IMG/VR virus record: IMGVR_UViG_3300026521_000471
Span: 1-64,000 of that record
Length of the DNA stretch: 64,000 nt
Reading direction: 5' to 3' (one strand)
In this document: in pieces, positions 4,322-52,262 of the stretch
Layout of the letters: the number at the start of each line of letters is the position of its first letter
How positions within the stretch are numbered: position 1 is the stretch's first letter
Notes under the pieces: generated by a model
What the model was told of the DNA's origin: nothing
Database searches by the model: none
What the model saw: the letters and a program-made list of their open reading frames with translations, nothing else
Position numbers and translations under genes: made by a program

Positions 4322-4663
4322 ATGTACTATGAAACACATATTACTTACAATAAACCTCTTTCACATATACGTAATCTACTACCAAATTTAAAATCGACAA
4401 AGCAACAAATTATTTCTGTAAAAATTATTAAAACTGAATCAATGACAGAAAATAATAAAGGTGTTTATTGTGTATTAAAAGATTATAATTTTGAAACTAT
4501 TGGTTTTATATCGACTACTCGCAAAGCTGCTTATGATATAGCACTTAAACATTGTGTACTTCCAGAAGAGAATAGTAGACTAATATATGATTTTAAAGCT
4601 ATGGATGATAGAAAAGAAATTTTAGAGACAGTTTCTAAAGATTTTCCAGAGTTATTAATATGA
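4322..4663 (+). CDS. small protein with PE-tail (FPELLI)
   Basis: Terminal motif; its C-terminal ~25 aa resemble the next ORF (F.A.DD.....L..(V/I)S..(F/Y)PEL). Confidence 0.7.
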   Translation: MYYETHITYNKPLSHIRNLLPNLKSTKQQIISVKIIKTESMTENNKGVYCVLKDYNFETIGFISTTRKAAYDIALKHCVLPEENSRLIYDFKAMDDRKEILETVSKDFPELLI

Positions 4664-4989: not shown

Positions 4990-5031
4990 AAAAATGTAAA
5001 ATATATTATATACCAATAAAAGAGGAAACAA

Positions 5032-8420: not shown

Positions 8421-8678
8421 TTAAATAAAAAATTCGGGATATTTCTTTATCCCTGTATCTATCAAATATTTATCAGATTTTTTAATAAAATAAAACCCTT
8501 TTTTATAGCTCTTAGCAAGGTAACTATAAAATTCACTTTCTATATTAGTTTCAAATTCTTGAATATTATCAAAATTATGAGTAATATTGAAAACATTTAT
8601 ATATGGTTCTTTCTTATTATCAATATCTATACGTATTTCCATATCACTACCATACTTTAGTTTTATAAACCATTTCAT
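8421..8678 (-). CDS. small protein with PE-tail (YPEFFI)
   Basis: Terminal motif; coupled array. Confidence 0.7.
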   Translation of the reverse strand: MKWFIKLKYGSDMEIRIDIDNKKEPYINVFNITHNFDNIQEFETNIESEFYSYLAKSYKKGFYFIKKSDKYLIDTGIKKYPEFFI

Positions 8679-9037
8679 ATGAATAGCTCTGGAAATTTAT
8701 TAATTAGATAATATTTATTTTTATTTATGATTGAATATTTCCAATCCAAATAAATAGCTTCCATATAAATCAATGATAGAATATCATCTTCCCCTCGTTT
8801 TTTTAAAAGACCTGTTTCTAAGAATCTTTTTAGTCGAATTTGTTTTTCTAATGATGTAGTCTGTTCGATAATATTAAAGTGTTCATCGAGAGTAATAAGA
8901 GTTAGTTCATAGACACTTTTATCCATATCAAGTAATTCTTGCTTTATACTAGTATTTGATATATCTTGAATAAAAGCCTCTTTATCATCTTCCGTCATAG
9001 AATTATACAGTCGTCTAATACGTTTTAAAAGAATCAT
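8675..9037 (-). CDS. small protein with PE-tail (FPELFI)
   Basis: Terminal motif; coupled array. Confidence 0.7.
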   Translation of the reverse strand: MILLKRIRRLYNSMTEDDKEAFIQDISNTSIKQELLDMDKSVYELTLITLDEHFNIIEQTTSLEKQIRLKRFLETGLLKKRGEDDILSLIYMEAIYLDWKYSIINKNKYYLINKFPELFI

Positions 9038-9327
9038 ATAAAATCCTCAGGACACATATTTGCAGCAGTATTTATAAACGGTTTAAGAGTTCTAATAGCA
9101 TCTCTTGACATATTATTTTGTCGTTTATATAATGCTGCAATTATTTTATGAAATTCATTTTCTTCTTCAATTTTTAAAACTTGATATACTACTGTATCAA
9201 ATCCTCCACCAGGATTAAAATGATTTTCTTTTCTTTTATAATTTGTTTCGTATGGTATTTTTGTTATATAAAGATCTAAAATAAAATCAGATTTACCAAT
9301 AACTGCGATTTTCCATAATTTTTTCAT
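9034..9327 (-). CDS. small protein with PE-tail (CPEDFI)
   Basis: Terminal motif; coupled array. Confidence 0.7.
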   Translation of the reverse strand: MKKLWKIAVIGKSDFILDLYITKIPYETNYKRKENHFNPGGGFDTVVYQVLKIEEENEFHKIIAALYKRQNNMSRDAIRTLKPFINTAANMCPEDFI

Positions 9328-9626
9328 AAGTAATACTCCGGAAATTTATTTAGAGGATATGTTTTATCAAATTCATATTTTAGATTTTCAAGCGTATTGA
9401 CTAGCAAAGTATATTTTGTTGCTATTGAATTATTTAATGTTGGACAATCTAAAGACCCTTTAGCAATTTTTTGCTGAAACGTATATTCTTTAAGAAAACG
9501 ATTAGGTGACATAATTTGTAAGACATCACCCAAATCTTTTTTTTCATATAGAAAATATTTCATATCTATTAATTGTGCATACTTATCTAAAATTAAAAAT
9601 GGTAGATCTATTTTATTTTCTTTCAT
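9324..9626 (-). CDS. small protein with PE-tail (FPEYYL)
   Basis: Terminal motif; coupled array. Confidence 0.7.
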   Translation of the reverse strand: MKENKIDLPFLILDKYAQLIDMKYFLYEKKDLGDVLQIMSPNRFLKEYTFQQKIAKGSLDCPTLNNSIATKYTLLVNTLENLKYEFDKTYPLNKFPEYYL

Positions 9627-12460: not shown

Positions 12461-12690
12461 ACAATTTAAATAAAGGTGATATAATTGAATTTCAAATGTC
12501 CTTTGGAAAACTCCACGGTGTTATAGAAGTTAAAACAGAAGATTTAATACATGTTCGTAGTTTTTCTTTGGATAAAACTGCACATCGATGGTTTATGTTT
12601 TATCAAGAAACTTTTAAACATGTAAAAAATAATTATGGGGCTCAACTTGAAGACGACTTCATTACATCAAATCCTGAGAGGTTTATATGA
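12448..12690 (+). CDS. small protein with PE-tail (NPERFI); start moved from 12358 to ATG 12448
   Basis: GAAGAG upstream of 12448; avoids a long overlap. Confidence 0.65.
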   Translation: MYDLNNLNKGDIIEFQMSFGKLHGVIEVKTEDLIHVRSFSLDKTAHRWFMFYQETFKHVKNNYGAQLEDDFITSNPERFI

Positions 12691-12938
12691 AGAATATATA
12701 TGAAATAGCCAATGAATGTTATCCTATGTTATTAGTACACCCTGCAACAAACTGGGAACAGGAAATTCATAATTATAGAGCTCTAATTATCATAGAGATT
12801 TCAAAGCATTACCCTGATATTCTTGATAACTGTGAAGATTGCGTTAAAGTTATTCAAAATTCTGATGTACTAGAATATAAATTTAGTGATAAATTTATAA
12901 AACGGATTTTAGAAAAGTATCCTGAAGCATTAATATGA
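12687..12938 (+). CDS. small protein with PE-tail (YPEALI)
   Basis: Terminal motif; ATGA overlap. Confidence 0.7.
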   Translation: MKNIYEIANECYPMLLVHPATNWEQEIHNYRALIIIEISKHYPDILDNCEDCVKVIQNSDVLEYKFSDKFIKRILEKYPEALI

Positions 12939-16737: not shown

Positions 16738-17064
16738 ATGAAATTAAAGGATATTAATTATACTGGTATCTTTTTTAATGATGGTATGCATATGACTTGG
16801 AATTATGGATTACCTAGAAAATATCCTAGTAACATTCAATCTGGAGAGCTTGCAGAAGTTACTGTAATTGGGAAATATGAAGATGACCAAGTAGCGTGTT
16901 GGGTTGTTAAATATGGAAGATATACTCATCAACCGTCAGGAACTTTATTGCATGTTACTACTAAAGTTACTAATGGTGGTAAAGCTGTAATGAGTGGTCA
17001 AAGAGCAACAAAGAATGGTTATGAGAAAATTAAATCGTTTAAATTAAAAGGTGTATGGAGATGA
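16738..17064 (+). CDS. 2H phosphoesterase (cyclic phosphodiesterase-like)
   Basis: Two HxT motifs (HMT, HVT) followed by NGGKAVMSG; near the RNA ligase. Confidence 0.6.
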   Translation: MKLKDINYTGIFFNDGMHMTWNYGLPRKYPSNIQSGELAEVTVIGKYEDDQVACWVVKYGRYTHQPSGTLLHVTTKVTNGGKAVMSGQRATKNGYEKIKSFKLKGVWR

Positions 17065-17324
17065 ATTTAAAAAAGAGTGACATAGTCTTATTTAATTCTA
17101 ATATGTCTAATAATAAAATAGTTAAAACCACAGGTATTGTTATGGACAATGAAGATATTAATGGTATTATTAGTATTCAAGCTGTTGATGAAGTTGGAAG
17201 TATACGTTCTATTTTTGGAGCCTTTACATCGAATCCAACGGACATCCATAAGAGAAATATTATATCAGTCTTGGGTAATCTAAATGATTTAGTCATAGAA
17301 AAATTCCCTGAATATACAATTTGA
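17055..17324 (+). CDS. small protein with PE-tail (FPEYTI)
   Basis: Terminal motif. Confidence 0.7.
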   Translation: MEMNLKKSDIVLFNSNMSNNKIVKTTGIVMDNEDINGIISIQAVDEVGSIRSIFGAFTSNPTDIHKRNIISVLGNLNDLVIEKFPEYTI

Positions 17325-18390: not shown

Positions 18391-18635
18391 GTGCATCGGA
18401 CTACTTAGATCCAGAAATTAAAGATTTTGTTAGAGGGTATTCTAGAATAAATGTTGAATTAAAAAGAATACCTCCTAAGCTTTTAAAAACTAAGTTGGTT
18501 TCTTCATATGAGTCTGTTTCTTCAGCATCATATTTAGGTGATATTGAAAAAAATAATATGTTATGGTGTATAACTCAAGCTATTGAGGAATTGCATAATG
18601 AGATTTCAGAAGTTTATCCAGAGATTTGTATATGA
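18387..18635 (+). CDS. small protein with PE-tail (YPEICI)
   Basis: Terminal motif. Confidence 0.7.
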   Translation: MSASDYLDPEIKDFVRGYSRINVELKRIPPKLLKTKLVSSYESVSSASYLGDIEKNNMLWCITQAIEELHNEISEVYPEICI

Positions 18636-18898
18636 ATAATTTATCAAAAATAAAAGAGAAAGTTGAAAATGAATTAGAGAAGGTATCTAGAGAGATCTTC
18701 GATATGAAGATAGTAAATGATATGACAATAAGATTCTTTCAGATGAATTATACTAAATGTGAAATTAAACCTGATTATATTAAATGTATGAAATGTCACA
18801 ATATGGAAGATCCTTTTAAATCAACCAATATAGAGATAATTCTTTCAGACGCTTTTATAAATGAGTTAAAAAAACATTACCCGGAAGATCTAATATGA
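18626..18898 (+). CDS. small protein with PE-tail (YPEDLI)
   Basis: Terminal motif; likely start ATG 18632. Confidence 0.7.
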   Translation: MYMNNLSKIKEKVENELEKVSREIFDMKIVNDMTIRFFQMNYTKCEIKPDYIKCMKCHNMEDPFKSTNIEIILSDAFINELKKHYPEDLI

Positions 18899-19406: not shown

Positions 19407-19413
19407 TTTTCAT

Positions 19414-26841: not shown

Positions 26842-28137
26842 GTGGAAAATATTGATATAGGTATTATTGATGTAGAATCTTTAAAAACCTTAAATAAAAT
26901 TTTAGAATCAAAAAAAGAATATATTATAAATTATTGGCTAGATGATGAAAAACTCAAGCCAATTTTTGAGATGTTGGAAATAGAAAAAGAAACATTTAAA
27001 AGCAAATACGCATATCATATTTTTCATCATTTTCAATCCATTGATTATGATAATATGTATTTTAAAACATATATCGATGAAATGGAAGACAAACAGCATT
27101 TAATAAAATATTTTTACCGATTAATCGCTCATCTAAAGAATAAGATTATATTATTTTTAATACAGTATAACATAGATAACAATGATAAAATATTTATGGA
27201 TGATTCACTGCTATATACGATTGATAATGCTATATCTGAATTATTAGATTCTATAACAAAACATCTTCAAAGAGATTATACTGCAAATACAAAAAAATTA
27301 AAGATATTAGAAAATGCTGCATTAGTTACTAGAACTGATAAAGACGGTAGCATATTATTTATGAGCCCACCATTATTAGAGTTACTAGGATATTCAGAAG
27401 AGGAAATGCTTGGAGCAGGTTTTAATAAAATCAGACATCCCAGAGTTTCTTCTAAATTTTATGAAAAACTATGGAGGACATTAAAATCTGGTAAACCTTT
27501 CAAAGGGACTATTAAAAATTTAACTAAGAATAGAAAAGAAGTAATATTTCATACACAAATTGTTCCTGATTTTAATTTTGATGGAGAAATAGTTGGTTAT
27601 ACAGCTATAAAAACAGATTTAACCGATAAAACAAGAGCAAGAACTGACACATTAACAGGTCTTTTAAATCGTTCAGCATTTAATGATCGATTATCTGAAC
27701 TTATAGATAGATATAACAATTTTCATATTCCAGTTTCTTTAATAATGATTGATATTGATTATTTTAGTGAAGTAAATAATAACTACGGTCATATTACTGG
27801 TGATAAAACTCTAAAACATTTTGTTAAACTAATTAAAGAGATAATTAGACCTACTGATACATTTGCAAGATGGGGAGGGGAAGAATTTATTATAATTCAA
27901 AATAATACATTAGATAATTCTATTAAAACTGCTGAAAGAATAAGAAAACATATAGCAGAAAGCACGTTCCCAGAAGTAGGACAAAAAACATGTAGTCTAG
28001 GTGTGGCAGAATTTAATAATAGTTATGCAGATATAGATTCATTTATAAATGAACTTGATAAAGCATTATATTATTCAAAAGAACATGGACGTAATAAGGT
28101 CTCATACGTAGTTAAAAATGGTATAGAATCTGTTTAA
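26842..28137 (+). CDS. PAS-GGDEF diguanylate cyclase
   Basis: PAS (FNKIRHP...LWRTL), DTLTGLLNR, DIDYFSEVNNNYGHITGD, I-site RPTD, active site RWGGEEF. Confidence 0.93.
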   Translation: MENIDIGIIDVESLKTLNKILESKKEYIINYWLDDEKLKPIFEMLEIEKETFKSKYAYHIFHHFQSIDYDNMYFKTYIDEMEDKQHLIKYFYRLIAHLKNKIILFLIQYNIDNNDKIFMDDSLLYTIDNAISELLDSITKHLQRDYTANTKKLKILENAALVTRTDKDGSILFMSPPLLELLGYSEEEMLGAGFNKIRHPRVSSKFYEKLWRTLKSGKPFKGTIKNLTKNRKEVIFHTQIVPDFNFDGEIVGYTAIKTDLTDKTRARTDTLTGLLNRSAFNDRLSELIDRYNNFHIPVSLIMIDIDYFSEVNNNYGHITGDKTLKHFVKLIKEIIRPTDTFARWGGEEFIIIQNNTLDNSIKTAERIRKHIAESTFPEVGQKTCSLGVAEFNNSYADIDSFINELDKALYYSKEHGRNKVSYVVKNGIESV

Positions 28138-29219: not shown

Positions 29220-29287
29220 AAAATGTAAAATTCTAAAAAACAGTTGTACTCTGAATAGAGACACTATCAAAATTTAAGGTCATTATT

Positions 29288-35995: not shown

Positions 35996-36766
35996 ATGAG
36001 ATATGGTATAGAGAAATTTGATGATGTGATCGCAGTTTATGTATCGCCAACTTTAGATGATAATGAATATTCAATAAGTGATGTTGAAAATACTTCAAAA
36101 CAATATACTTTAGAAAAAGATATAGAATCTATTCCAGGATATAGTACTGATTTTGAAATTGATGGAAGTGCAGAGAATACTATTTTTATTGTTTCTACAA
36201 AATCATTTTCAGAGATCGAGGAATTAATTGTTTCTAATCTCAAACACACTCTAGTATCAAATGATAAACATTTGAAAAAACTATCAAGAGAAGCTAAGAG
36301 TGAATCATCTTCAGATACACCAATAGATTTAGAAACTTATGAGGGTTTAAAAAAATATTTAGAAACACAAAAATACACTATCAAAAAAGCCAAAGAACTT
36401 TTAAATACCGAAACAGCTAAAAATCATTTAGATTTAATTGCGATTGTTCTTGATAAGATCTTTATGAAGTATAGTACAGAAGAAAAGTTTTTTAAATCTA
36501 TTGAATGGTTATCTGATTTTGATTTATCAAATGAAATTGAAAGTATTATTGAATACCGTTCAAAAGCAAAAGATGGTTATGCTGATGATAATAAAATGTC
36601 GACAATTCTTAGTAGATATGTTGGAGCTTCATCAAATGTTGAAGTATTAGAGAAAATAAAAGATAAGTTGGAGCCTGTTAAAAATGACCAATTCTTTTCA
36701 GGGGTTTATGAAGATGCAGATAACCAAATAAAAATACTTAAAGATTTATTTTTTAAGTTGGATTAA
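35996..36766 (+). CDS. hypothetical protein
   Basis: 256-aa ORF, AAGGA RBS. Confidence 0.7.
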   Translation: MRYGIEKFDDVIAVYVSPTLDDNEYSISDVENTSKQYTLEKDIESIPGYSTDFEIDGSAENTIFIVSTKSFSEIEELIVSNLKHTLVSNDKHLKKLSREAKSESSSDTPIDLETYEGLKKYLETQKYTIKKAKELLNTETAKNHLDLIAIVLDKIFMKYSTEEKFFKSIEWLSDFDLSNEIESIIEYRSKAKDGYADDNKMSTILSRYVGASSNVEVLEKIKDKLEPVKNDQFFSGVYEDADNQIKILKDLFFKLD

Positions 36767-36784
36767 GTTAGTATTCGATATAAT
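36763..36784 (+). promoter_or_regulatory. class I promoter TTAAG-N11-TATAAT
   Basis: Motif match. Confidence 0.7.
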
Positions 36785-36813
36785 AACAGAAGAAATCTAA
36801 AAGGATTAGTATA

Positions 36814-38268
36814 ATGAATGAAAATGATGTTAAAGAAGAAATTAAAGAAGCTTGGAAAGATTTAAAAAACGGTACAAAAGTTAAAGCTAAGCTTACTGAA
36901 AAAATGGATGAGAAGCTCGACGGTTTAGTAGCAGCAGCAAAAGCTGGAAATTGGAAAACTCAGCTGGAAGAAGCAATAGTACAGATGATTACTTATAATT
37001 ATTCAAGTAATGAAAGTTTAATGTGGTATGGACATTTAGTAACTCAATGTGAAATAAAAAGAGATTTAACTATGCCAAGTCCTGCTGGGGTAAGATTTAT
37101 GTTTAATAAATACGAGATGTTTATTAATCCTTTACTTTTTGGTTTATATTCAACCGATGAACAAATTGCTATATTGAAACATGAAATGTTACATATTATC
37201 AATTTGCACATTGTAAGACAAAAAGATAGAGACCATAAAAAATGGAATTATGGTACTGATTTATCTATCAACCAATTAATCCCAAACATTCCTGAAGATG
37301 GATTACAACCTGAAAAATTTGATTTTGCAAAAAACCTTAATGCAGAACAGTATTATGATATGATACCTACAAACTATGAGAGTGAAGAACCTCAAGAAGG
37401 TAATGAAGACGGTGAGGGTGGTGGAAGTTGTTCTGCACAAGGTTCCGGAGATGGAGAGCCACAAGATGGTGATGGTTCTGGAAACGGTGATGGTTCTGAT
37501 GTAATTGATGATGAGAAAAAACTTAAAGATCTAATCTCCCAAGCATTAAATGCAGCTCAAGAAGGAATGATTGGTGATCATGGTAAGTGGCAAAATTCTG
37601 AAGGTGATGAACAGGCCGCAAAAGAAATTACAAGACAGATGTGTGAAACAGCTACTAATAAATCCAGAGGTATGACACCAGGTGAAGTAGAAGGAGCAAT
37701 CCAATTACTTAAAATGCAGGAGCAAATTAACTGGAAGAAAGAGCTGAGAAGAATTGTTGGTAATAGAAAAGCATTTTCTAAACTTACAATTAAGAAAAAT
37801 GATAGAAGATTTCCAGGTCGTAAGGATTTAAGAGGTAAAACAAAAGATCATACAAAAGATATTGTAGTTATCTTAGATGTATCGGGTTCTATGAGTGATG
37901 AGGAAGTTCTCTATGGTTTAAATGAAATTAAGGCTATTGCAGAAAAAGCTAGAGCTGGGGTTACTATTATTCAAGTTGATACAGAGCCAAAAATTGTAGA
38001 AGATTTTGATCCAAAAGCAAAAACTTTTAATCGTAGAGGTTATGGTGGTACTTATATGACTCCTGGAATTGAAATGATTAAGGAACAGAAATTAAAATGT
38101 GACTGTATTTTGTGTATAACTGATGGTTACATTGAATCAACTTTTGATATTGATTTACCAAGAGTACCATTTATTTTCTTAGTTACACAAGATGCAGATA
38201 ATTTATCTATTGATGTAGGTTCATATCCGAGAATGAAAAAACATACATTGAAAATTGGTGATAAGTAG
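36814..38268 (+). CDS. DUF2201-type HExxH metallopeptidase plus VWA domain protein
   Basis: LKHEMLHI, WNYGTDLSIN, G/D-rich linker, MIDAS DVSGS, GYGGT, TDGY. Confidence 0.9.
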   Translation: MNENDVKEEIKEAWKDLKNGTKVKAKLTEKMDEKLDGLVAAAKAGNWKTQLEEAIVQMITYNYSSNESLMWYGHLVTQCEIKRDLTMPSPAGVRFMFNKYEMFINPLLFGLYSTDEQIAILKHEMLHIINLHIVRQKDRDHKKWNYGTDLSINQLIPNIPEDGLQPEKFDFAKNLNAEQYYDMIPTNYESEEPQEGNEDGEGGGSCSAQGSGDGEPQDGDGSGNGDGSDVIDDEKKLKDLISQALNAAQEGMIGDHGKWQNSEGDEQAAKEITRQMCETATNKSRGMTPGEVEGAIQLLKMQEQINWKKELRRIVGNRKAFSKLTIKKNDRRFPGRKDLRGKTKDHTKDIVVILDVSGSMSDEEVLYGLNEIKAIAEKARAGVTIIQVDTEPKIVEDFDPKAKTFNRRGYGGTYMTPGIEMIKEQKLKCDCILCITDGYIESTFDIDLPRVPFIFLVTQDADNLSIDVGSYPRMKKHTLKIGDK

Positions 38269-38524
38269 AGTTATTATGTGGGCTTATAAGTTTACAGATT
38301 CAAGAGGAAATGATTACTATGAGTTTCCTTTTGAAATATCTAGTTCAACATTTCTTAATTCAAATGAATATCAAATAGTAAATACTGAAAGAGAAGCTGT
38401 TAAAGAATTTAAAAAAGCAATTGATTTCAATATACCATATAAAGCTCATTATGAAGATATGCAAAAACTTAATAAAGAATTGGCTAAATTATATCTTAAA
38501 AAGTATCCGGAGATATTTATATAA
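38255..38524 (+). CDS. small protein with PE-tail (YPEIFI)
   Basis: Terminal motif. Confidence 0.7.
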   Translation: MVISRVIMWAYKFTDSRGNDYYEFPFEISSSTFLNSNEYQIVNTEREAVKEFKKAIDFNIPYKAHYEDMQKLNKELAKLYLKKYPEIFI

Positions 38525-38865
38525 TGTATCATTTTAAATTAAAACTTAGAGATATTCACAAAAATGCGTATAGATCATTTTTATTTCCAGAAAAAGCACC
38601 TAAAAATTCTACTAGTCATTGTGCGAAAATCAATTCGTTATATACAGAAGGTTGGTTTGCTGATAAATCATTGATAGAATCTGAAATCCACTTTATTAAA
38701 TCTGTTAAATTTTTTTTAAATGGTGCAATTAAAGATTTAAAGAAAAATAACACTTATACAGGGTGGGATGAATCATATCTTAAAGATGATGTTGCATTTT
38801 TAGAAAATGTATGGAAATTAACAATTCAAAAATATGCGGATAAATATCCGGAGCTAGTATTATGA
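38524..38865 (+). CDS. small protein with PE-tail (YPELVL)
   Basis: Terminal motif; TAATG overlap. Confidence 0.7.
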   Translation: MYHFKLKLRDIHKNAYRSFLFPEKAPKNSTSHCAKINSLYTEGWFADKSLIESEIHFIKSVKFFLNGAIKDLKKNNTYTGWDESYLKDDVAFLENVWKLTIQKYADKYPELVL

Positions 38866-39101
38866 GTTTTATCAAATTCACATTTAAAAATAACAGCTAT
38901 GCTATAGGACGTTTATTTTCAAAGATTGGAAAAGATAACTGGGCAAATATTGAAATAGTTAAGCCGTATAATGGTAGAAATGAGACTTTAAAAAAATATT
39001 ATACTAAGGGTAGAACATTTCAAGCTGATACATCTAGTACTTCAGATTATGTTAAAACTGCATTTATAGATCCAAAGTCTCACCCAGAATATTTTATTTA
39101 A
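38862..39101 (+). CDS. small protein with PE-tail (HPEYFI)
   Basis: Terminal motif; ATGA overlap. Confidence 0.7.
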   Translation: MSFIKFTFKNNSYAIGRLFSKIGKDNWANIEIVKPYNGRNETLKKYYTKGRTFQADTSSTSDYVKTAFIDPKSHPEYFI

Positions 39102-39106
39102 AAAGG

Positions 39107-39469
39107 TTGTTGATGTATTTCTCATATCAAGCACATACTTTAGATGGAAAATCTCTTAAAATTTATTTACCATTACCAACTAAAAAATCACAATATGAAG
39201 ATAGACTGAAATTTTATAAACAAATAGATGATAGAAAATTATATGTCGTGAAAGATACTAAAGATATTATTAGAGAATGTCATATACATAATACTTTAAA
39301 AGAATCAATAAATTATATAAGAAAAGATCTAATATATTCGATTGAATGGATAAGTGATGATAAAAATGCACCTCCTGGTAATCCTGATGTTTATGTGGCT
39401 AAATGTAGAGATGCTTTAACTGAATTAGAAAATAAATATATCAATAAATTCCCGGAGATATTCTTATGA
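39107..39469 (+). CDS. small protein with PE-tail (FPEIFL)
   Basis: Terminal motif. Confidence 0.7.
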   Translation: MLMYFSYQAHTLDGKSLKIYLPLPTKKSQYEDRLKFYKQIDDRKLYVVKDTKDIIRECHIHNTLKESINYIRKDLIYSIEWISDDKNAPPGNPDVYVAKCRDALTELENKYINKFPEIFL

Positions 39470-39654
39470 TTGTAGATGTAGATAAAAAGGCAATCCAACA
39501 ACAAATAAAGTTTTTAGTTAAAATAATAAACCAATATCAAAAAAGATTAGAAACTGAACCTCAATTTTTAACTAGAGAAGTTGAAGAAAATTTAGAAAGA
39601 GCTAAAGCAAAATATGATTATATTATTAAAGAATATCCAGACTTAATCATCTAG
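39466..39654 (+). CDS. small protein with PE-tail (YPDLII)
   Basis: Terminal motif; ATGA overlap. Confidence 0.7.
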   Translation: MIVDVDKKAIQQQIKFLVKIINQYQKRLETEPQFLTREVEENLERAKAKYDYIIKEYPDLII

Positions 39655-41301
39655 ACTATTTTTTAAATCTAATATATTACCGAATGATTTTTTATGAGTT
39701 ATTTGAGCAAAAATATTTTTCATATCATTACCTGAAAGATGACCTCGTTCTGCTTCTCTCATTAAATTTTTTGTTATTTTAAACTCGCCATTATATTTAA
39801 ATAATTCAAATGCTAAATTTATAATATGACCTTGTATTTGTAACGTATTAGAAGCACTAGCATATCCAAATTCTCTGGCTACTGCAATAATTTTTTTCAT
39901 GTTTTGTGGCATATTCCAAATACTAAAAAGCTTCTCAACAGCGTGTAAATTATTAAATCCTAATAGATTCATTTCTAAACTAGTTATAGATTTTGACGAT
40001 TTTTGTAAATTTTTAAAACGATCTACTCTCTCATTAATAATTAAAGCCTGATTTGTCAGGAGCATACCTAGTGGTAATATATGCATAACAGCAGTTAAAT
40101 CATCTTTATCATCTTGGGGTATATCTATAAATTTAATCCATTCTGAAACAAATTTAACTCGGTATTTTGAAACTTCAATTAACTCTTCTAATGAAATATC
40201 ATATGCGTCTAAATATAAACTGTCAAATGTTTCGTTAGCTACCTCTGTTATTGCTAATGCCCCTATTTGTTTTTTACCTAGTAATGATACAGCAATAGAG
40301 ATTTTTGATACTCGATTTGGTAGGCCTATATACGGGGAATTAATTTCCCGTAAAATAATTGCTGAGAACATTGGATCTTGTTCAACAACTTTTACTATTT
40401 GGTTGATATTTGAATTGCTATCAAAACACAATTCTTTTAACTTAGTTAATGTACTAGGTAAAGGTTCAATTGCTTCAGCTAGTTCAACTAATGTAATCTG
40501 CCCTTTATTAATAGGTATTTCAATCTCCGTATTACTACGTTCATATTTTTTAACAATCATAGTCTTAAAATCAGCCATTTTCATATTATGTGTATTATAA
40601 ACATTTTCGATTGCTAATTTTTCTTTAACTAAGTTTAAAGAACTTTCTTTACTGAATTTACTCAAAACATATAAATTTTCAAAATCGAATTCAATATCAT
40701 TTAAACAAACTATGAGATCTATGATATGCCCATCGGGGTATTTTAAATCAGTTATTAAAATTTTTTTACCGGGCATTTTTATAAGGTCAATTGCCTCGGA
40801 TTTAGTAGAAACACTATCCACAAATTTAAATTTTGTACTAAGAATTTCTGTTAATAATTTTGATACTTTTGGATCTCGATTAAGGATCACAATATCATAA
40901 TATTCATTAAGTTTTGGGGAAGTGTAATTTTTACATTGAACGATTGGCGCAGTATCAAATTCAATAGCATAAAATTCTGGATCTTCATGTTGTTGAATTT
41001 GAGTTACCCACCTTTCAATTTGAATAGAAAAGTTTTCAAACCAATTAATCACATCTTGATTAAAAGCACAAGTATAATTTTTTATAAAAAACAAAATATC
41101 TTCTGTTTTTTCAAGGAGAATAGAAATTTCTTCAAATTTATGATAGTAAGTAATAGCTTTTAATGAATGTATCGACCTAAATAATGTGTCGATCAATTTT
41201 GATGAATTAATTTCATCATTTCTAAAATCAATAATAGTGTTATTAATAATTATAGACAAATTATCTAATCTTATAATATAATCTTCAAGTTCTTCAGTCA
41301 T
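39643..41301 (-). CDS. Hpt + receiver-like + HDOD signalling protein
   Basis: CheA-P1-like LFRSIHSLKA; REC-like ILITDLKYPDG; HDOD PLPSTL...VEQDPMFSAIILREINSP...AVSLLG...WNMP. Confidence 0.85.
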   Translation of the reverse strand: MTEELEDYIIRLDNLSIIINNTIIDFRNDEINSSKLIDTLFRSIHSLKAITYYHKFEEISILLEKTEDILFFIKNYTCAFNQDVINWFENFSIQIERWVTQIQQHEDPEFYAIEFDTAPIVQCKNYTSPKLNEYYDIVILNRDPKVSKLLTEILSTKFKFVDSVSTKSEAIDLIKMPGKKILITDLKYPDGHIIDLIVCLNDIEFDFENLYVLSKFSKESSLNLVKEKLAIENVYNTHNMKMADFKTMIVKKYERSNTEIEIPINKGQITLVELAEAIEPLPSTLTKLKELCFDSNSNINQIVKVVEQDPMFSAIILREINSPYIGLPNRVSKISIAVSLLGKKQIGALAITEVANETFDSLYLDAYDISLEELIEVSKYRVKFVSEWIKFIDIPQDDKDDLTAVMHILPLGMLLTNQALIINERVDRFKNLQKSSKSITSLEMNLLGFNNLHAVEKLFSIWNMPQNMKKIIAVAREFGYASASNTLQIQGHIINLAFELFKYNGEFKITKNLMREAERGHLSGNDMKNIFAQITHKKSFGNILDLKNSLDD

Positions 41302-41469
41302 TACATTAAAAACCTATTTTAATTTTATTTATAATGAATATGCAATATTTTCCCAGTCAATGTCATTCCATGTCAAATACATTTTACCCTCCTATTTTTG
41401 GTATCTATAAAATATTTATATTAATTATAATATATTTTAAGCAAAAATCTGATTAAATTTTAAGCAAAA

Positions 41470-42027
41470 TTATTTACGTTTCATTATAATTTGCCCTTTA
41501 ACATTAACTAATGATTTTTTTCTAGTTAATTTATGCTCCCTTATAAAAATTTTAGAACGATATTCATAAGCATTATAAATTTCATCTCCAATTTTCAAAC
41601 TTATAAGTTGTTCTCTATAAAGTGATGCTAATCGTTCATCTGTTATATTCCATATTTCACCAAAATGAGCAAGTCGTACTCTTTCAGCAAGTACTTGAAA
41701 ATCATCAATACTAATATTTTTCTTTTTTAATTCTTCTTCTTTTTCTGGAGTAATTACAAATCTTTTATTTTTATCTTCATGAAAAACTAACTTAGTGTAT
41801 GCTGGATATTTTACAGCATCAACTTTTGTATGACCAAATCGTAATATCGGTTGTTTATTTTTAAAACGTTCAATATAGTCAATATCCATAAGATGCCAGG
41901 TATTTTGATGTTCAAAATTTGGATATGAAATAGCAATAAGTGACCACTCTTTTTTATCATGATATTTATAAAATTCATTCTTTAATTCGAGAAGTATTTC
42001 GTTTAAATTATGATAATATTCATTCAT
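41470..42027 (-). CDS. hypothetical protein
   Basis: AAGGGA RBS; TATAAATA at 42051-42058 (minus). Confidence 0.65.
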   Translation of the reverse strand: MNEYYHNLNEILLELKNEFYKYHDKKEWSLIAISYPNFEHQNTWHLMDIDYIERFKNKQPILRFGHTKVDAVKYPAYTKLVFHEDKNKRFVITPEKEEELKKKNISIDDFQVLAERVRLAHFGEIWNITDERLASLYREQLISLKIGDEIYNAYEYRSKIFIREHKLTRKKSLVNVKGQIIMKRK

Positions 42028-42109: not shown

Positions 42110-43682
42110 ATGGCAAAAGAGAAATTTGTTAGGGGTGAAAAACCTCATGTTAATGTGGGAACAGTAGGGCATAGACTATGTGCCATCTCTTGGTAACAAG
42201 GGATTAAAAAGAGTTTAAATTGTCTGGAAACCCCTAAAGCTTCTTTTACTAAAACAGAGCCAGAAATGGCATATGGTATAGTTAATGAAAATTAGAAAGA
42301 AAAAAGAAGATGGAATATGTGGAAACGCTAAGTTCTTTATAATGGGCAATCAGCAGCCAAGTTACCTAACTCAAATATATTGAGATTTCTATGTGAATAG
42401 AATTTAAGGTAGAAGGTTCAGAGACTGTAATAACTCAGTCCGTTAATCTTAATTGAATTTCGGATTATGGTACAGTCCAGACTACAACAACTTTACTTAG
42501 TTAGTTGGCTTATGAAAGTAAGTGTAGTAATTGGTAGATCATGGCAAGACTACTTTAACTGCAGCAATTACAGCAGTAATGGCAGTTAAAAACGGTGCAG
42601 CATTTATGGATTACGATCAAATCGATAATGCACCAGAAGAAAGAGAAAGAGGTATCACTATTGCTACTTCTCATGTTGAATATGAAACTGATAAAAGACA
42701 TTATGCTCATGTTGATTGTCCAGGTCACGCAGATTATGTTAAAAATATGATTACTGGTGCTGCACAAATGGATGGTGCTATTCTTGTTATTGCTGCTACT
42801 GATGGACCTATGGCTCAAACGAGAGAACATATCCTTCTTTCAAAACAAGTTGGTGTACCAGCAATTGTTGTTTTTATGAACAAAGAGGACCAACTTGATG
42901 ATGAAGATAAAGATGAAATGGCTGAACTTGTAGAAATGGAGATTAGAGAACTTCTTGACCAATACGGTTTTGATGGTGATAACACTCCTGTTATTCTTGG
43001 TAGTGCATTTCAAGCTCTTGAAGAAGCAAAAACCGGTACTTTAGGTGAGTGGTCAGAAAAGATTGTACAACTTATGGATTCAGTAGATGAGTGGATTCCA
43101 GAACCAGTTAGAGATACTGATAAGGATTTCTTAATGCCTATTGAAGATGTATTCTCAATTGCAGGTAGAGGTACAGTTGTTACTGGTAAAATTGAGAGAG
43201 GTACAATCAAACTTGGTGAAACAGTAGAAATTGTAGGTATTAAAGACACTCAAACATCAACTGTTACAGGAATTGAGATGTTCCGTAAAGAGATGGAAGA
43301 AGGTTTAGCTGGGGATAATGCAGGTATTCTTCTAAGAGGAATTTCAAAAGATGATGTTGAAAGAGGTCAAGTTCTTTGTAAACCTGGTTCAATAACACCA
43401 CATACAAAGTTCAAAGCGGAAGTTTATGTTCTAAGTAAAGATGAGGGTGGTCGTCATACTCCATTCTTTAATAATTATAGACCTCAGTTCTATTTCTATA
43501 CATCTGATATTACTGGTGCAATTACACTAGAAGAAGGTGTTGAAATGGCTATGCCTGGTGATAATGTGACTATTACGGTAGAACTTATTGCTCCAATGGC
43601 TATCGAAAAAGGAACAACTTTTGCTATTAGAGAAGGTGGTAGAACTGTCGGCTCTGGTATGATTGGAGAAATTATCGAGTAA
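42110..43682 (+). CDS. tuf: elongation factor Tu, two exons: join(42110..42172,42534..43682), 403 aa
   Basis: Exon 1 [21 protein letters not shown] plus exon 2 VDHGKTT; [30 protein letters not shown]. Confidence 0.97.
42173..42533 (+). ncRNA. group I intron (361 nt, no ORF) in the tuf P-loop
   Basis: P1 GGCAU/GUGCC with U.G at the splice site; P10 CUAU/GUAG; GGGCAATCAGCAGCCAAG; GTTCAGAGACTG and ACAGTCC (P7); terminal G; removal restores GHVDHGKT. Confidence 0.95.
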
Positions 43683-45712: not shown

Positions 45713-47100
45713 ACACCTCGCTGAGAAAACCCAATGGCTAAAGACCATTGGGATGAATCAGCAATTATTTGACATTTTACATTAATTTATTGTAAAATAA
45801 GTATATAGATATAGAGTTTAAGGAGGATTGAGTTGAAATTTCATCGTAATTACAAATTCAGATTACAACCAAATACTGAACAATCCGATTTCCTTAATCA
45901 TTATTTCTTTACTGCAAATCAAGCCTGGAACTTTGCTTTGAATTTAAAAATCAAAGACCTTTCTGTCAATTCTTCTCTGCCGAAGGCAGATAGGAAATAC
46001 TTAAAGTTCAAAGATATTTATTCTCTTACAAAAGAACACCTTAAAGAACGAGGAATTAAATACAATTCAGGTGTAATTCAAGATGAACTAAGAAAATTAG
46101 ATGATACGTTTTCTCGATTCCATAAGAAAATTGGTGGATTTCCTAAATTCAAGTCCTCAAAGAAAATCGAACAATCAATCATCATCAGGAATCAAGCAAC
46201 TTATTGGGATGAAATGGAATTGGAGATCTTCAGAAAGAAAATCAGAACTAAATTCCATCGAGAAATTCCTTTGGAATCTAAATTTACTGGTGGTATTGTA
46301 AAAAGAGAGTCAGATGGAAACTATTATTTTATTGCTAATTTGATCATTAATGATAAAAATCAATATCCAAAAACAGGAACAGAATGTGCTCTTGATTTGA
46401 ATGTAGAAAATATAGCTATTTCAGATTCAAATGGAAATCGAAGATTGATTAAATTGGAGGATTTTTCAAAAAGTAAATATTCAAAGAACTTTTTAAAGTT
46501 ACAAAGAAAACTTTCAAAAAGATACAAAGAAAAGAACTTTTCTAAAAATACCAAACGATTACAAAAGAAATCAAATCGAATGTACAAGAAAATCAAAAAC
46601 AAAAAAGAGGATTTTTTTCACAAGCTCAGTAATGAGCTGACTAATCAATATGATAGAATCACAATAGAAGATCTGGAAATCAAAAAGATGAAAGAATCGA
46701 AATCAAATCGACTCAATCGTCTGATTTCAGATGTAAGTTGGGGTTCGTTGATACAAAAAATCAAATATAAACAAGAACAAAAGAACAAATTGATTAGAGA
46801 ATTAAATCCAGCTTTTAGCAGTCAGAGATGCTTCAAATGTGGTCATATCAGTAAGAACAATAGAAAAACGCAAAGCGTTTTTAATTGTGAAAACTGTGGA
46901 TACACTACTCATGCAGACCTGAATGCTTCAGATAATCTCTTAGATTATGATAATTGGTCTCTGGAACAGATGACCTTGATCCAGCAATGGAATCAGAATC
47001 TTTGTATCGAGAATGTCAGTTAATTCTGAAATTCGATGATTGGAGTGCCTCTCGGCACTCCCTTAGAAGCCCAATCGTCTTTAGCGGTTGGGTAGTTCAC
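45713..47100 (+). mobile_element. IS200/IS605-family non-autonomous (tnpB-only, IS1341-like) element, 1388 bp
   Basis: TTTAT target at 45708-45712; left hairpin CCCAATGG/CCATTGGG 45730-45752; right hairpin 47070-47092 then TTCAC; no target duplication; no tnpA. Confidence 0.9.
45833..47023 (+). CDS. tnpB: TnpB RNA-guided endonuclease
   Basis: YKFRLQP HTH, GFPKFKS, RuvC D (ALDLN), E (IEDL), Zn finger CFKC/CENC, D (ADLNAS). Confidence 0.95.
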   Translation: MKFHRNYKFRLQPNTEQSDFLNHYFFTANQAWNFALNLKIKDLSVNSSLPKADRKYLKFKDIYSLTKEHLKERGIKYNSGVIQDELRKLDDTFSRFHKKIGGFPKFKSSKKIEQSIIIRNQATYWDEMELEIFRKKIRTKFHREIPLESKFTGGIVKRESDGNYYFIANLIINDKNQYPKTGTECALDLNVENIAISDSNGNRRLIKLEDFSKSKYSKNFLKLQRKLSKRYKEKNFSKNTKRLQKKSNRMYKKIKNKKEDFFHKLSNELTNQYDRITIEDLEIKKMKESKSNRLNRLISDVSWGSLIQKIKYKQEQKNKLIRELNPAFSSQRCFKCGHISKNNRKTQSVFNCENCGYTTHADLNASDNLLDYDNWSLEQMTLIQQWNQNLCIENVS

Positions 47101-50428: not shown

Positions 50429-50713
50429 ATGAATACTAGTAGAGAAAGTTTTCAATTAGATTTAGAACGTACTACATCAACAGAATTAGAAGAAGTCGTA
50501 ATATGTTCAAAATGTAATGGTTATGGTTCTTCACAATTAAAAGGTGATTTTATTGTTTACGGGAATGATACAGATCTTAAACAAAATAATATTTGTTCAT
50601 CTTGCAATGGTACTGGAAAATTAATCAAACAAACCGTAGTATCATTTGTATCATTTGACCCAAATTTAGCAATAAAAACACATATCGTTTCAAATCCAGA
50701 AAATTTTATTTAA
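50429..50713 (+). CDS. DnaJ-type CxxCxGxG zinc-finger protein with PE-tail (NPENFI)
   Basis: CSKCNGYG, CSSCNGTG. Confidence 0.75.
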   Translation: MNTSRESFQLDLERTTSTELEEVVICSKCNGYGSSQLKGDFIVYGNDTDLKQNNICSSCNGTGKLIKQTVVSFVSFDPNLAIKTHIVSNPENFI

Positions 50714-50757
50714 TTTTAAAGTATAACATAGTATAATTAAAGAAAATAGGATTATGC

Positions 50758-51035: not shown

Positions 51036-51410
51036 ATGAAACGAACATTAACAAGTACATTTGATAATATGGTTGCATTGATTAAAAGAAAAGAACCTCA
51101 TATCGATGCCATTAAAAAAGCAGAAGAAGAATTCAAGAATCAAAATATCAAATTAAAATACTATGTTACTACAATAGGTATGCCAAAATTATCAGATATA
51201 GCAGAAGGTACATTAGTCAAAACACCTGCTAAGTATTTTGATAATTTGATACAAGCAAAATTATTTCAAGATAAAATAATTTTAGATGAAAGTAAGAAAA
51301 ATATTGATGAGCGACATATTTGGTTTGATAGTATTACAAATGATGAACTAAATTTTGTCAAAAATGAATTTAATAATCTAATAAAGAATTATCCAGAATA
51401 TGCAATTTAA
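51036..51410 (+). CDS. small protein with PE-tail (YPEYAI)
   Basis: Terminal motif. Confidence 0.7.
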   Translation: MKRTLTSTFDNMVALIKRKEPHIDAIKKAEEEFKNQNIKLKYYVTTIGMPKLSDIAEGTLVKTPAKYFDNLIQAKLFQDKIILDESKKNIDERHIWFDSITNDELNFVKNEFNNLIKNYPEYAI

Positions 51411-51651
51411 TAATATAGAAATAGGTTCTATAATTATTACAAAGTATGGTGCATTTAAAGTATTTGCTTCCCCAAGTATGAAACAAATCAATGGAAATAA
51501 TATATTATCCATACCATCAATAAACTTATTACATAAGGCATCAAAACCATTTGATATTGGTATTAAATATATACCTATTAGTCATATAATAGAGAAATTT
51601 AATATCTCTATCAATGAATTTATAAAAGAATACCCGGAGAAAATTATATGA
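51400..51651 (+). CDS. small protein with PE-tail (YPEKII)
   Basis: Terminal motif. Confidence 0.7.
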   Translation: MQFNNIEIGSIIITKYGAFKVFASPSMKQINGNNILSIPSINLLHKASKPFDIGIKYIPISHIIEKFNISINEFIKEYPEKII

Positions 51652-52262
51652 AATTAGATGATATTACTATGAGTGAATTTGACTGGTGTATCCACGCTAT
51701 TTTAGTTGCTGGAAAATCAGCAAAATTTGGAACTTCAAAAATTACTATATTAAAAAAATTTGCAAGTAATATGGATTTAACCATGGAAGATTATTTATTT
51801 AAGTTGTGGAATGAAGATAAATTGATTGATAAATTGAAAGAAATTAAAACTGGTAAATATCAGTTACTTGGTAAAACTTTCGATTACTTGTTTAAGAATA
51901 AATTAAATATTTTTTCAAATTTAGATACTACTGAATTAGAAAAAATCCCTGGTATTGGAATGAAGTCATCAAGATTTTTAAAGTCATTAGTTGAATCAAA
52001 TCATAATGATTTCGCAATATTGGATGTTCATATTTTGAAATGGATGAAAACATTAGACTTAAACTTAGAAATTAAAATACCTAGTTCAACACCTAATAAA
52101 AAGGAATATTTAATATTAGAAAAAGTCTTTATAGCTGAGGCAAATAAAAGAGGCAAAACTTCATTTGAATTAGATAGAGAAATATGGTATAATTATACTA
52201 AAGATTCAGGTTTGCAAAAGTTGGAAAAAAATAAAGTTGAGGGTATAAACTATGAAAATTAA
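51648..52262 (+). CDS. HhH-GPD DNA glycosylase (Ogg-like)
   Basis: LEKIPGIGMKSSRF, AILDVHILK, YLILEK, ELDREIW. Confidence 0.85.
   Translation: MKLDDITMSEFDWCIHAILVAGKSAKFGTSKITILKKFASNMDLTMEDYLFKLWNEDKLIDKLKEIKTGKYQLLGKTFDYLFKNKLNIFSNLDTTELEKIPGIGMKSSRFLKSLVESNHNDFAILDVHILKWMKTLDLNLEIKIPSSTPNKKEYLILEKVFIAEANKRGKTSFELDREIWYNYTKDSGLQKLEKNKVEGINYEN

What the first reader, a model, noticed from the sequence alone, without database searches (positions are those of the whole stretch)
38500..39470. The PE-tail DNA doubles as a translational-coupling cassette
Seen: where the next gene overlaps, the Pro-Glu codons tend to spell a Shine-Dalgarno and the last codon plus stop supplies the start: CCGGAG atatttata TAATG (38524), CCGGAG ctagtatt ATGA (38862), CCGGAG atattctt ATGA (39466), CCGGAG aaaattat ATGA (51648), CCTGAGAGG tttat ATGA (12687), minus-strand CCGGAG and CCTGAGGA at 9327 and 9037. 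Members without an overlapping follower mostly use CCAGAA...TAA (4989, 13246, 29219, 39101, 50713, 63198). CCG is otherwise rare in this AT-rich DNA. Inference: the tail is a plug-and-play junction (tag + RBS + start) that could let arrays grow or shuffle by microhomology recombination.
Basis: partly seen in the sequence, partly recalled or inferred. Interest (0 to 1): 0.6.

Follow-up and report, generated by a model that had tools for sequence, protein, structure and literature searches.

The report
Shine-Dalgarno embedded in Pro-Glu tail
In a 224-kb hydrothermal-vent phage, dozens of small genes end in the same Pro-Glu peptide tail, and where the next gene starts on the stop codon the silent letters of those two codons spell a ribosome-binding site: a real, replicated but mechanistically ordinary case of overlapping-gene translational coupling.

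Summary
The genome (224,467 bp, 27.9% GC, a jumbo phage) has 39 ORFs ending [YF]-P-E-x-h-[ILV]-stop (h = hydrophobic), 29 of them in the window. Thirteen are followed by a gene starting on the stop (ATGA, once TAATG). These use GAG for Glu in 11/13 and CCG for Pro in 7/13. The other 26 use GAG 1/26 and CCG 0/26 (Fisher p=5e-7 and 1e-4). Genome usage is GAG 16%, CCG 7.7%. CCGGAG puts GGAG 8 nt before the ATG, within this phage's usual SD spacing.

The association replicates in other IMG/VR phage contigs (GAG 60/72 against 19/53, p=7e-8). In a 221-kb relative, junction GAGs are kept 8/9 against a 47% synonymous baseline. One orthologue lost the Pro but kept GGAG and ATGA. Where the follower gene was deleted, CCG became CCA and ATGA was lost.

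So peptide-level conservation is primary, and selection on silent positions adds an intragenic SD. This is known biology.

The "plug-and-play recombination junction" idea is not supported: array order is conserved, breakpoints are not enriched beyond gene boundaries, and no tail-to-tail exchange was seen. The unannotated PE tail, shared by about 170 unrelated protein bodies, is the more interesting object.

The parts
38276..38524 (+). PE-tail gene 1 of the focal array (82 aa, ends KYPEIFI). The start is taken at ATG 38276, matching the gene call in the relative.
38507..38526 (+). Junction cassette CCG GAG ATA TTT ATA TAA-TG. GGAG lies at 38509-38512, the stop at 38522-38524 and the follower ATG at 38524-38526 (-1 overlap, 11-nt spacer).
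   Evidence: Identical in the relative.
38524..38865 (+). PE-tail gene 2 (113 aa, ends KYPELVL).
38848..38865 (+). Junction cassette CCG GAG CTA GTA TTA TGA. GGAG lies at 38850-38853, followed by an 8-nt spacer and ATGA at 38862-38865.
   Evidence: The relative has CCA GAA here with ATGA kept, the one loss among nine retained junctions.
38862..39101 (+). PE-tail gene 3 (79 aa, ends SHPEYFI). Its tail is CCA GAA ... ATT TAA with no overlapping follower. The next gene has its own intergenic AAAGG Shine-Dalgarno at 39102-39106.
39113..39469 (+). PE-tail gene 4 (118 aa from ATG 39113, ends KFPEIFL).
39452..39469 (+). Junction cassette CCG GAG ATA TTC TTA TGA. GGAG lies at 39454-39457 and ATGA at 39466-39469.
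   Evidence: CCG GAG and ATGA are conserved in the relative while neighbouring silent sites differ.
39466..39654 (+). PE-tail gene 5, the last of the array (62 aa, ends EYPDLII). Its tail is CCA GAC ... ATC TAG with no follower on this strand.
4646..4663 (+). Junction cassette CCA GAG TTA TTA ATA TGA. The follower is PE gene 4660-4989.
8675..8692 (-). Junction cassette CCA GAG CTA TTC ATA TGA. The follower is PE gene 8421-8678. The relative has CCG GAG.
9034..9051 (-). Junction cassette CCT GAG GAT TTT ATA TGA (GAGGA core). The follower is PE gene 8675-9037.
9324..9341 (-). Junction cassette CCG GAG TAT TAC TTA TGA. The follower is PE gene 9034-9327. In the relative the tail reads CTG GAG ... 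TTA TGA: Pro is lost, GGAG and ATGA are kept.
12673..12690 (+). Junction cassette CCT GAG AGG TTT ATA TGA. The follower is PE gene 12687-12938.
12921..12938 (+). Exception: junction tail CCT GAA GCA TTA ATA TGA (ATGA overlap, no SD core in the PE codons). The relative has the same sequence.
18618..18635 (+). Junction cassette CCA GAG ATT TGT ATA TGA. The relative has CCG GAG.
18881..18898 (+). Partial case: CCG GAA GAT CTA ATA TGA (a GGA core only).
51634..51651 (+). Junction cassette CCG GAG AAA ATT ATA TGA feeding a non-PE gene (51648-52262, 204 aa). In the relative that gene is internally deleted and the tail reads CCA GAG ... ATA TAA.

Best explanation
The window belongs to a jumbo phage from hydrothermal-vent metagenomes.

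The phage carries a large set of otherwise unrelated small proteins that share a C-terminal peptide tag: an amphipathic helix followed by [YF]-P-E-x-h-[ILV]-COOH. The tag is conserved at the amino-acid level.

The tag fixes a Pro-Glu pair at codons -5/-4. Silent third-base choices (CCN to CCG, GAA to GAG) therefore create GGAG exactly 8 nt upstream of an ATG formed by the last codon (ATA or TTA) plus a TGA stop.

Where the next cistron begins on that ATGA, selection on silent positions holds the rare codons in place as an intragenic Shine-Dalgarno. Terminating ribosomes can then re-initiate, or new 30S subunits can load, on the follower. Where no gene overlaps, the codons relax to the AT-rich genome's preferred CCA GAA ... 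ATT TAA.

Shown here:
- the codon-junction association;
- its replication in other phages;
- its evolutionary retention.

Inferred, not shown:
- that GGAG acts as an SD;
- that translation of the follower actually depends on the upstream gene.

The arrays are thus tightly packed operons of tagged genes, and the dual use is the ordinary consequence of a fixed dipeptide sitting in the SD window.
For: 1. Association in the genome: 11/13 junction tails use GAG against 1/26 others, and CCG is 7/13 against 0/26. Genome usage is 16% and 7.7%.

2. The phage uses canonical AAGGAG-type SDs. GGAG-to-start spacers peak at 6-8 nt, and the tail gives 8 nt.

3. It is a general rule in this genome. Of 30 non-PE genes with -4/-1 followers, 24 also embed an SD-like core in their last codons.

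4. Five tails have the follower ATG deeper inside the tail (-10 to -13), so the Glu codon cannot serve as an SD. All five use GAA.

5. Replication in IMG/VR contigs of 26-43% GC, with seed matches excluded:
- GAG 60/72 against 19/53 (p=7e-8); CCG 40/72 against 7/53 (p=9e-7).
- The result is unchanged after collapsing to protein clusters.
- The 183 tails fall into 170 clusters, so they are not recent copies.

6. Relative phage, about 87% DNA identity:
- An own GAG is GAG in the relative 47% of the time overall (101/215).
- At retained junctions the figure is 8/9 (p=0.012).
- The Pro third base changes freely.

7. Natural dissociations:
- The orthologue of 9324-9626 is truncated and diverged, with tail KFLEYHL (CTG GAG). 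Pro is gone, yet GGAG and ATGA for the surviving follower are intact.
- Where follower 51648-52262 is internally deleted, the tail is CCA GAG ... ATA TAA.

8. Peptide-level conservation is primary. All 26 tails without a -4/-1 follower keep Pro and Glu (Asp in one), written with CCA, CCT or CCC and GAA.

9. Contigs from a metatranscriptome library, identical to the window, bridge the junctions at 38524, 38865 and 39469. This is weak evidence.
Against: - No direct evidence of translation or of coupling: there is no ribosome profiling or reporter test.
- The RNA-library contigs cannot prove transcription or a single transcript.
- Two junction tails lack GAG (12921-12938 and 18881-18898).
- One orthologous junction in the relative is CCA GAA with ATGA kept, so the SD is helpful rather than obligatory.
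- In two IMG/VR contigs with few tails (A and G) no association is seen.
- The IMG/VR loci were found through a CCGGAG junction seed. The seeds were excluded, but a reciprocal CCAGAA seed yielded no usable arrays.
- Predicted RNA structure does not show the junction SDs to be especially sequestered. Whether initiation is coupled or independent therefore stays open.
Confidence: 0.82

Rival explanations
1. The tail DNA (tag + RBS + start) is a recombination junction. Microhomology at the tails lets arrays gain, lose or shuffle genes, and this explains why so many unrelated bodies carry the same tail.
For: - PE genes are arrayed, and 11 of 13 junction followers are PE genes themselves.
- The 183 tails sit on about 170 unrelated bodies.
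- PE genes carry -4/-1 junctions more often than size-matched genes.
- Two PE-gene indels against the relative have one breakpoint inside tail codons: 16810-17312, and the loss of 50429-50713.
- The relative carries a partial duplicate of the 3' half of a PE gene.
Against: - Array order is identical over about 68 kb.
- About 4 of about 28 indel end-points lie near PE tails, while PE tails make up about 22% of gene ends. That is no enrichment over the gene-boundary baseline.
- In neither tail-breakpoint case is the other breakpoint in a tail.
- The microhomologies are CCT-GA, AAT and AATTATG, not the cassette.
- The partial duplicate extends 19 nt past the tail into the convergent dnaJ gene, so it is not bounded by the tail.
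- Tails vary freely at silent sites, with no sign of homogenisation.
Confidence: 0.08
2. The association is an artefact of shared ancestry. Junction tails would be recent tandem copies that inherited CCGGAG...ATGA together, with no selection on the silent sites.
For: Some near-identical tails occur in IMG/VR arrays, for example PKSKYPEYYL three times in one contig.
Against: - Members are nearly unalignable outside the tail: only 10 weak BLAST pairs among the 39, and 170 clusters among 183 proteins.
- The cluster-collapsed Fisher tests stay at p of about 1e-7.
- Silent sites between the two relatives are about 32% changed at four-fold positions, yet junction GAG is kept 8/9.
Confidence: 0.03
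3. The DNA/RNA element is primary and the Pro-Glu peptide is only its translation. An SD (or another CCGGAG-type site) would be conserved, with no function for the peptide tail.
For: In several IMG/VR arrays most tails are junction tails with CCGGAG.
Against: - Twenty-six of 39 tails in this genome have no -4/-1 follower, yet keep Pro and Glu (Asp in one) with AT-rich codons.
- These tails also keep the aromatic residue at -6 and the hydrophobic residues at -2 and -1.
- An SD alone would appear in all three frames and give varied residues, as it does at the non-PE junctions.
Confidence: 0.04

Closest known systems
Co-directional gene pairs with a 4-nt (ATGA) or 1-nt stop-start overlap and an intragenic Shine-Dalgarno, translated by termination-reinitiation (Huber et al. 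2019, PMC6728339)
   Same: - ATGA/TAATG overlaps.
- An SD core inside the upstream ORF at the normal spacing.
- An SD that helps but is not always essential; exceptions exist here too.
   Different: - Here the SD is always written in the same two codons of a conserved C-terminal peptide tag shared by many unrelated proteins. The dual coding is therefore stereotyped rather than ad hoc.
- Coupling itself is not demonstrated here.
Codon bias at the 3' ends of genes caused by the neighbouring gene's ribosome-binding site
   Same: Silent codon choice near the stop is shifted toward SD-forming codons when a gene follows closely.
   Different: That effect is a weak genome-wide trend. Here it is almost all-or-none (85% against 4% GAG), because the amino acids are fixed and only the silent positions can respond.
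Conserved boundary or linker sequences between phage gene modules, and integron attC cassette junctions (recalled from memory)
   Same: A short repeated sequence sits at the junction between successive genes of an array.
   Different: - Those are DNA-level recombination sites whose sequence is conserved as DNA.
- Here silent positions vary freely.
- No recombinase is linked to the tail.
- No breakpoint enrichment or reshuffling was seen.
C-terminal short linear docking motifs, such as sliding-clamp-binding tails or the SSB acidic-hydrophobic tail (recalled from memory)
   Same: A short peptide at the extreme C terminus, ending in hydrophobic residues, is shared by proteins that are otherwise unrelated.
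   Different: The sequence ([YF]PExh[ILV]) matches none of the motifs recalled. No partner is known, and no Pfam, PHROG or NCBIfam family covers it.

Membership tests
Translationally coupled overlapping gene pairs with an intragenic SD | Co-directional genes whose stop and start codons overlap by 4 nt (ATGA) or 1 nt | tested here: met
   Thirteen of 39 PE-tail genes meet this: 12 with ATGA and one with TAATG. Eleven of the followers are themselves PE-family genes. The same starts were called independently in the relative.
Translationally coupled overlapping gene pairs with an intragenic SD | An SD-like motif inside the upstream ORF at functional distance from the downstream start | tested here: met
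   GGAG or GAGG lies 8 nt (11 nt in one case) before the ATG in 11/13 junction tails. The genome's SD spacing peaks at 6-8 nt.
Translationally coupled overlapping gene pairs with an intragenic SD | Both cistrons lie on one transcript | tested here: inconclusive
   Contigs from a metatranscriptome library, identical to the window, span 38117-38636, 38829-39263 and 39267-39524. Contigs cannot prove transcription or a single RNA. Consensus promoter and terminator scans are uninformative in this AT-rich DNA.
Translationally coupled overlapping gene pairs with an intragenic SD | Translation of the downstream gene depends on translation of the upstream gene | not testable with these tools
   This needs a premature-stop or reporter experiment, or ribosome profiling. 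RNA folding gave no clear sign that the SD is sequestered.
Known protein families (Pfam-A, PHROGs v4, NCBIfam) for the PE-tail proteins | A significant profile match shared by the members | tested here: not met
   No family is shared by the 29 window members. Nine of 10 IMG/VR members have no hit at all.
DNA-level recombination junction (module boundary sequence or cassette site) | Sequence conserved as DNA beyond what the coding requires | tested here: not met
   Pro, Tyr/Phe and last-residue codons vary among members and between orthologues. Only the junction-linked G's are held.
DNA-level recombination junction (module boundary sequence or cassette site) | Breakpoints between related genomes concentrate at the element, and gene order is shuffled | tested here: inconclusive
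   Only one relative pair over about 68 kb was available. Order is conserved, two of about 14 indels have one end in tail codons, and no tail-to-tail exchange was seen. The sample is too small to exclude the idea.

The most novel reading that the evidence does not exclude
The tail could be more than a passive dual-coding site. It would be a self-contained evolutionary module (docking tag + RBS + start) that any ORF can acquire or donate without amino-acid change. Phages would use it to recruit new small genes into co-translated arrays. That would explain why about 170 unrelated protein bodies in several phage lineages, from N4-like relatives to jumbo phages, end in the same hexapeptide.
Probability: 0.1. 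Interest if true: 0.7.

Novelty: new member of a known kind. Interest (0 to 1): 0.4.

Why it matters
The mechanism, an intragenic SD at a stop-start overlap, is textbook. Its value here is as an unusually clean natural experiment. The amino acids are fixed, so the silent positions report selection for ribosome binding almost all-or-none. That gives a simple rule for calling starts and operons in these phages.

The larger point lies beside the finding. An unannotated C-terminal tag, [YF]-P-E-x-h-[ILV]-COOH, is shared by hundreds of otherwise unrelated small proteins in several uncultured phage lineages. This suggests a common docking partner or fate that nobody has described. The tight coupling implies these proteins are made together.

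Tried and rejected
- DNA searches of 36000-42000 against GenBank phages and PLSDB plasmids found nothing.
- The search for related loci with the VWA protein found no relative in IMG/VR.
- The genome search cannot draw relatives for a virus record, and the relative's record is not held there. The relative was therefore reached by walking with the look-up of encoding contigs. Only about 68 kb of it was compared.
- RIIA and AspRS tblastn showed no close cultured phage.
- Alteromonas phage AD45-P1, the cultured relative of one IMG/VR contig, has no PE arrays in the 42 kb examined. It has only one APELLL-ended gene.
- A reciprocal, unbiased seed (AARTWYCCAGAA-N6-ATTTAA) returned almost only chance matches. 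The IMG/VR replication therefore rests on CCGGAG-seeded loci with the seeds removed.
- RNA folding of junctions against intergenic SDs gave unpaired probabilities of 0.48 and 0.56, p=0.2 in this genome. This says nothing about coupled against independent initiation.
- The consensus promoter/terminator scan found 24 sites against 29 expected by shuffling, so it is uninformative.
- A literature search for the tail strings found nothing relevant.
- ESM Atlas look-alikes: the model of gene 4 is poor (pLDDT 0.43). One IMG/VR member resembles small beta-barrel domains, at lead level only.
- I first read the orthologue of 9324-9626 as a dead pseudogene and rejected that. A 62-codon ORF with its own SD is still open.
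- Structure prediction, complex prediction and the large profile search were not run. The bodies are unrelated and the alignments too shallow to be informative for this question.

Full report
**What the window is**

The window is the first 64 kb of a single 224,467-bp contig with 27.9% GC. It is a virus record. The contig carries:
- RIIA and many PHROG-only proteins;
- 22 tRNAs and a tmRNA;
- EF-Tu, GGDEF/PAS and HDOD proteins, an M16 peptidase and a DUF2201 VWA protein;
- AspRS and GroEL.

It has no close DNA or protein relative among cultured phages or plasmids. Public runs that hold it are hydrothermal-vent, epibiont and biofilm metagenomes.

**The tail family**

Genome-wide, 39 ORFs end in P-[ED]-x-x-[ILV]-stop; 29 of them are in the window. 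The count of P-[ED] at that exact offset is 40, against 0-5 at neighbouring offsets.

The conserved part is a hydrophobic periodicity over about 15 residues followed by [YF]-P-E-x-h-[ILV]. Apart from that the members barely align: there are 10 weak BLAST pairs, mostly C-terminal. No Pfam, PHROG or NCBIfam family covers them.

Pro is written CCA, CCT, CCC or CCG, and the aromatic and last residues also use varied codons. Conservation is therefore at the peptide level.

**Checking the observation**

I classified each member by whether an ATG at -4 (ATGA) or -1 (TAATG) relative to the stop opens a downstream gene. Thirteen members have such a follower. Eleven of the followers are PE genes themselves. 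The independent gene calls on a related contig use the same starts.

| Codon | Junction tails (n=13) | All other tails (n=26) | Fisher p |
|---|---|---|---|
| GAG for Glu | 11 | 1 | 5.2e-7 |
| CCG for Pro | 7 | 0 | 1.1e-4 |

. Genome usage is GAG 16.2% and CCG 7.7%.

Five members have the follower's ATG deeper inside the tail (-10 to -13), where the Glu codon cannot act as an SD. All five use GAA, which is a useful internal control.

**Is GGAG at that place a plausible Shine-Dalgarno?**

Upstream of this phage's genes the enriched words are AAGG, AGGA and GGAG. GGAG-to-start spacers peak at 6-8 nt. CCGGAG followed by three codons and ATGA gives 8 nt; the TAATG case gives 11 nt.

The rule is general in this genome. 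Of 30 non-PE genes with -4/-1 followers, 24 embed an SD-like core in their last codons, usually AAGGA in other frames and other residues. The PE tail is thus the family-specific way of doing what overlapping pairs do everywhere.

PE genes carry such junctions about four times more often than size-matched non-PE genes with a close follower (13/31 against 16/99, p=0.005).

**Replication elsewhere**

A pattern search for K-[YF]-P(CCG)-E(GAG)-x-x-[IL]-TGA in IMG/VR returned 44 loci. About a dozen contigs of 26-43% GC carry dense arrays of small ORFs ending [YHF]-P-E-x-x-[ILV], for example 28 tails in 13 kb of one contig.

Some of these contigs are unrelated phage types. One is a relative of N4-like Alteromonas phages; another shares phrog_10773 with the present phage.

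With the seed matches excluded:

| Codon | Tails with a follower start 8-12 nt after the Glu codon | All other tails | Fisher p |
|---|---|---|---|
| GAG | 60/72 | 19/53 | 7e-8 |
| CCG | 40/72 | 7/53 | 9e-7 |

Among tails whose follower starts 13-40 nt after the Glu codon, GAG is 3/24 and CCG 0/24. The result holds after collapsing to protein clusters, and the 183 tails fall into 170 clusters.

Per contig the effect is significant in two, goes in the same direction in two, and is absent in two with few tails.

A caveat is that the loci were found through a CCGGAG junction. A reciprocal seed gave no usable arrays.

**Comparison with a relative**

One member has a 71%-identical homologue on a 221,509-bp JGI contig. 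By walking along that contig, plus a 72-kb ENA contig that shares identical proteins with it, I covered the equivalent of window positions 1-68 kb at about 82-92% DNA identity.

Silent sites have turned over substantially:
- Four-fold third positions are identical in 68% of cases.
- An own GAG is GAG in the relative in 101 of 215 conserved Glu columns, or 47%.
- At junctions retained in both genomes, GAG is kept in 8 of 9 (p=0.012).
- The adjacent Pro third base and neighbouring codons change freely.

Three variants are informative:
- The orthologue of 9324-9626 is N-terminally truncated and strongly diverged, though still an open 62-codon ORF. It ends KFLEYHL, written TTT CTG GAG TAT CAC TTA TGA. 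The Pro is gone, but GGAG and the ATGA of the surviving follower are intact.
- The 204-aa follower of 51400-51651 is internally deleted in the relative. There the tail reads CCA GAG ... ATA TAA, so the SD is weakened and the overlapping start is lost.
- Against the trend, the orthologue of 38524-38865 has CCA GAA with ATGA kept.

Together these show that the peptide and the SD are separable functions laid on the same letters. The SD is favoured rather than obligatory, as found experimentally for other overlapping pairs (PMC6728339).

**The recombination inference**

Between the two genomes, gene order in every array is the same. I found about 14 non-IS indels of gene or sub-gene size and two reciprocal TnpB/IS605 insertions.

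- Two indels have one breakpoint inside tail codons.
  - The 16810-17312 segment is absent from the relative. This leaves a short ORF ending ...YTI, joined at a CCT-AGA / CCT-GAA microhomology with a site inside a non-PE gene.
  - PE gene 50429-50713 is absent from the relative, which keeps the first two and last four codons; the join is at AAT.
- Two more indels begin just after a tail: at 19409 and at 51655.
- PE tails make up about 22% of gene ends in the window. Nearly all indels, PE or not, end at gene boundaries, so this is not an enrichment.
- No event joins one tail to another.
- The 113-nt deletion in the 9324-9626 orthologue uses AATTATG at the gene's start.
- A partial duplicate of PE gene 1981-2241 in the relative extends 19 nt beyond the tail into the convergent dnaJ gene.

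The inference is therefore unsupported by these data. With one relative pair it is not excluded.

**Expression**

Contigs from a metatranscriptome library, identical to the window, cover 38117-38636, 38829-39263 and 39267-39524, so they bridge three junctions. This fits co-transcription, but contigs cannot prove it. RNA folding gave no clear evidence that junction SDs are masked.

**Verdict**

Its mechanism is the known one: an intragenic SD at a -4/-1 overlap. It is made unusually regular because a conserved C-terminal dipeptide happens to sit in the SD window.

The "plug-and-play" reading is speculative and currently unsupported. The tail itself is an unannotated tag on about 170 unrelated small phage proteins across lineages. 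It is the more novel object and deserves its own study.

Noticed in passing
IMG/VR loci L016, L022, L026, L028, L029, L033, L039, L040, L048, L054, L058: The PE tail is not private to this phage. Dense arrays of 60-100-aa ORFs ending K-[YH]-P-E-Y-[YF]-[LI] occur in about a dozen uncultured viral contigs of 26-43% GC, including unrelated phage types. The bodies fall into about 170 clusters with no known family.
   Followed up: partly
G000 97868-99421, 100580-101929, 101930-103519, 112040-113350, 126668-127999, 128012-129322 and 198576-200702(-); window 6918-7442(-), 10238-10996(-): There are two other C-terminal tail types. Six phrog_10773 paralogues (a possible seventh, 105266-106705, has no PHROG match) and RIIA end in [DN]-x-L-F. 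Seven unrelated ORFs end in [DE]-h-F-[IVL]-F, which resembles a docking motif such as a clamp-binding tail.
   Followed up: no
window 45833-47023; L009 8215-10000: The TnpB/IS605-family element in the window is absent from the relative. The relative has a different TnpB inserted about 28 nt into the coding 5' end of the orthologue of 39113-39469, next to a TTAC, and that gene restarts at a GTG.
   Followed up: partly
L015 16242-17238 (the relative; equivalent to window about 3635-3710): The relative has an extra 217-aa gene with leucine-rich-type repeats (NNLTSLKGAPKE...). It also has a 58-aa partial duplicate of the C-terminal half of PE gene 1981-2241, tail included.
   Followed up: partly
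L012 8699-8953, L012 8183-8416 and L015 10398-10586: Some orthologues have damaged tails. One ends YYSEHLI (Pro to Ser). One ends KFLEYHL (Pro to Leu). One has a 1-nt frameshift that stops 26 nt before the tail, with the tail DNA and ATGA still in place.
   Followed up: partly
whole genome, for example window 4993-5000, 29223-29230 and 50720-50740: TGTAWAAT occurs 129 times, 49% of them in the 11% of the genome that is intergenic. It follows several array-terminal PE tails. It is probably an extended -10 type phage promoter marking the start of the next array.
   Followed up: partly
window 42531-43682, 1162-1980, 26842-28137, 39643-41301(-); G000 67779-83762, 181437-181818(-), 94364-96214, 121726-123351: The phage has an unusually rich translation and chaperone toolkit: EF-Tu, DnaJ, GroEL, AspRS, 22 tRNAs and a tmRNA (tag ANTKLYIPQTARVAA). 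It also has signalling genes for a GGDEF/PAS diguanylate cyclase and an HDOD protein.
   Followed up: no
window 12448, 19152, 51400, 62890; G000 167717: Five followers start at an ATG buried 10-13 nt inside the upstream PE tail, for example GA[A TG]T across the Glu codon. These give longer overlaps in other registers.
   Followed up: partly
window 50429-50713: This PE-tail member has a DnaJ-type CxxCxGxG zinc-finger motif (Pfam DnaJ_CXXCXGXG, E=5e-5). It shows that the tail sits on bodies of different folds. The gene is absent from the relative.
   Followed up: no
junction tails genome-wide: Leu as the last residue (TTA before TGA) occurs only in junction tails of this genome (4/13 against 0/26). 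The reason is unexplained.
   Followed up: no
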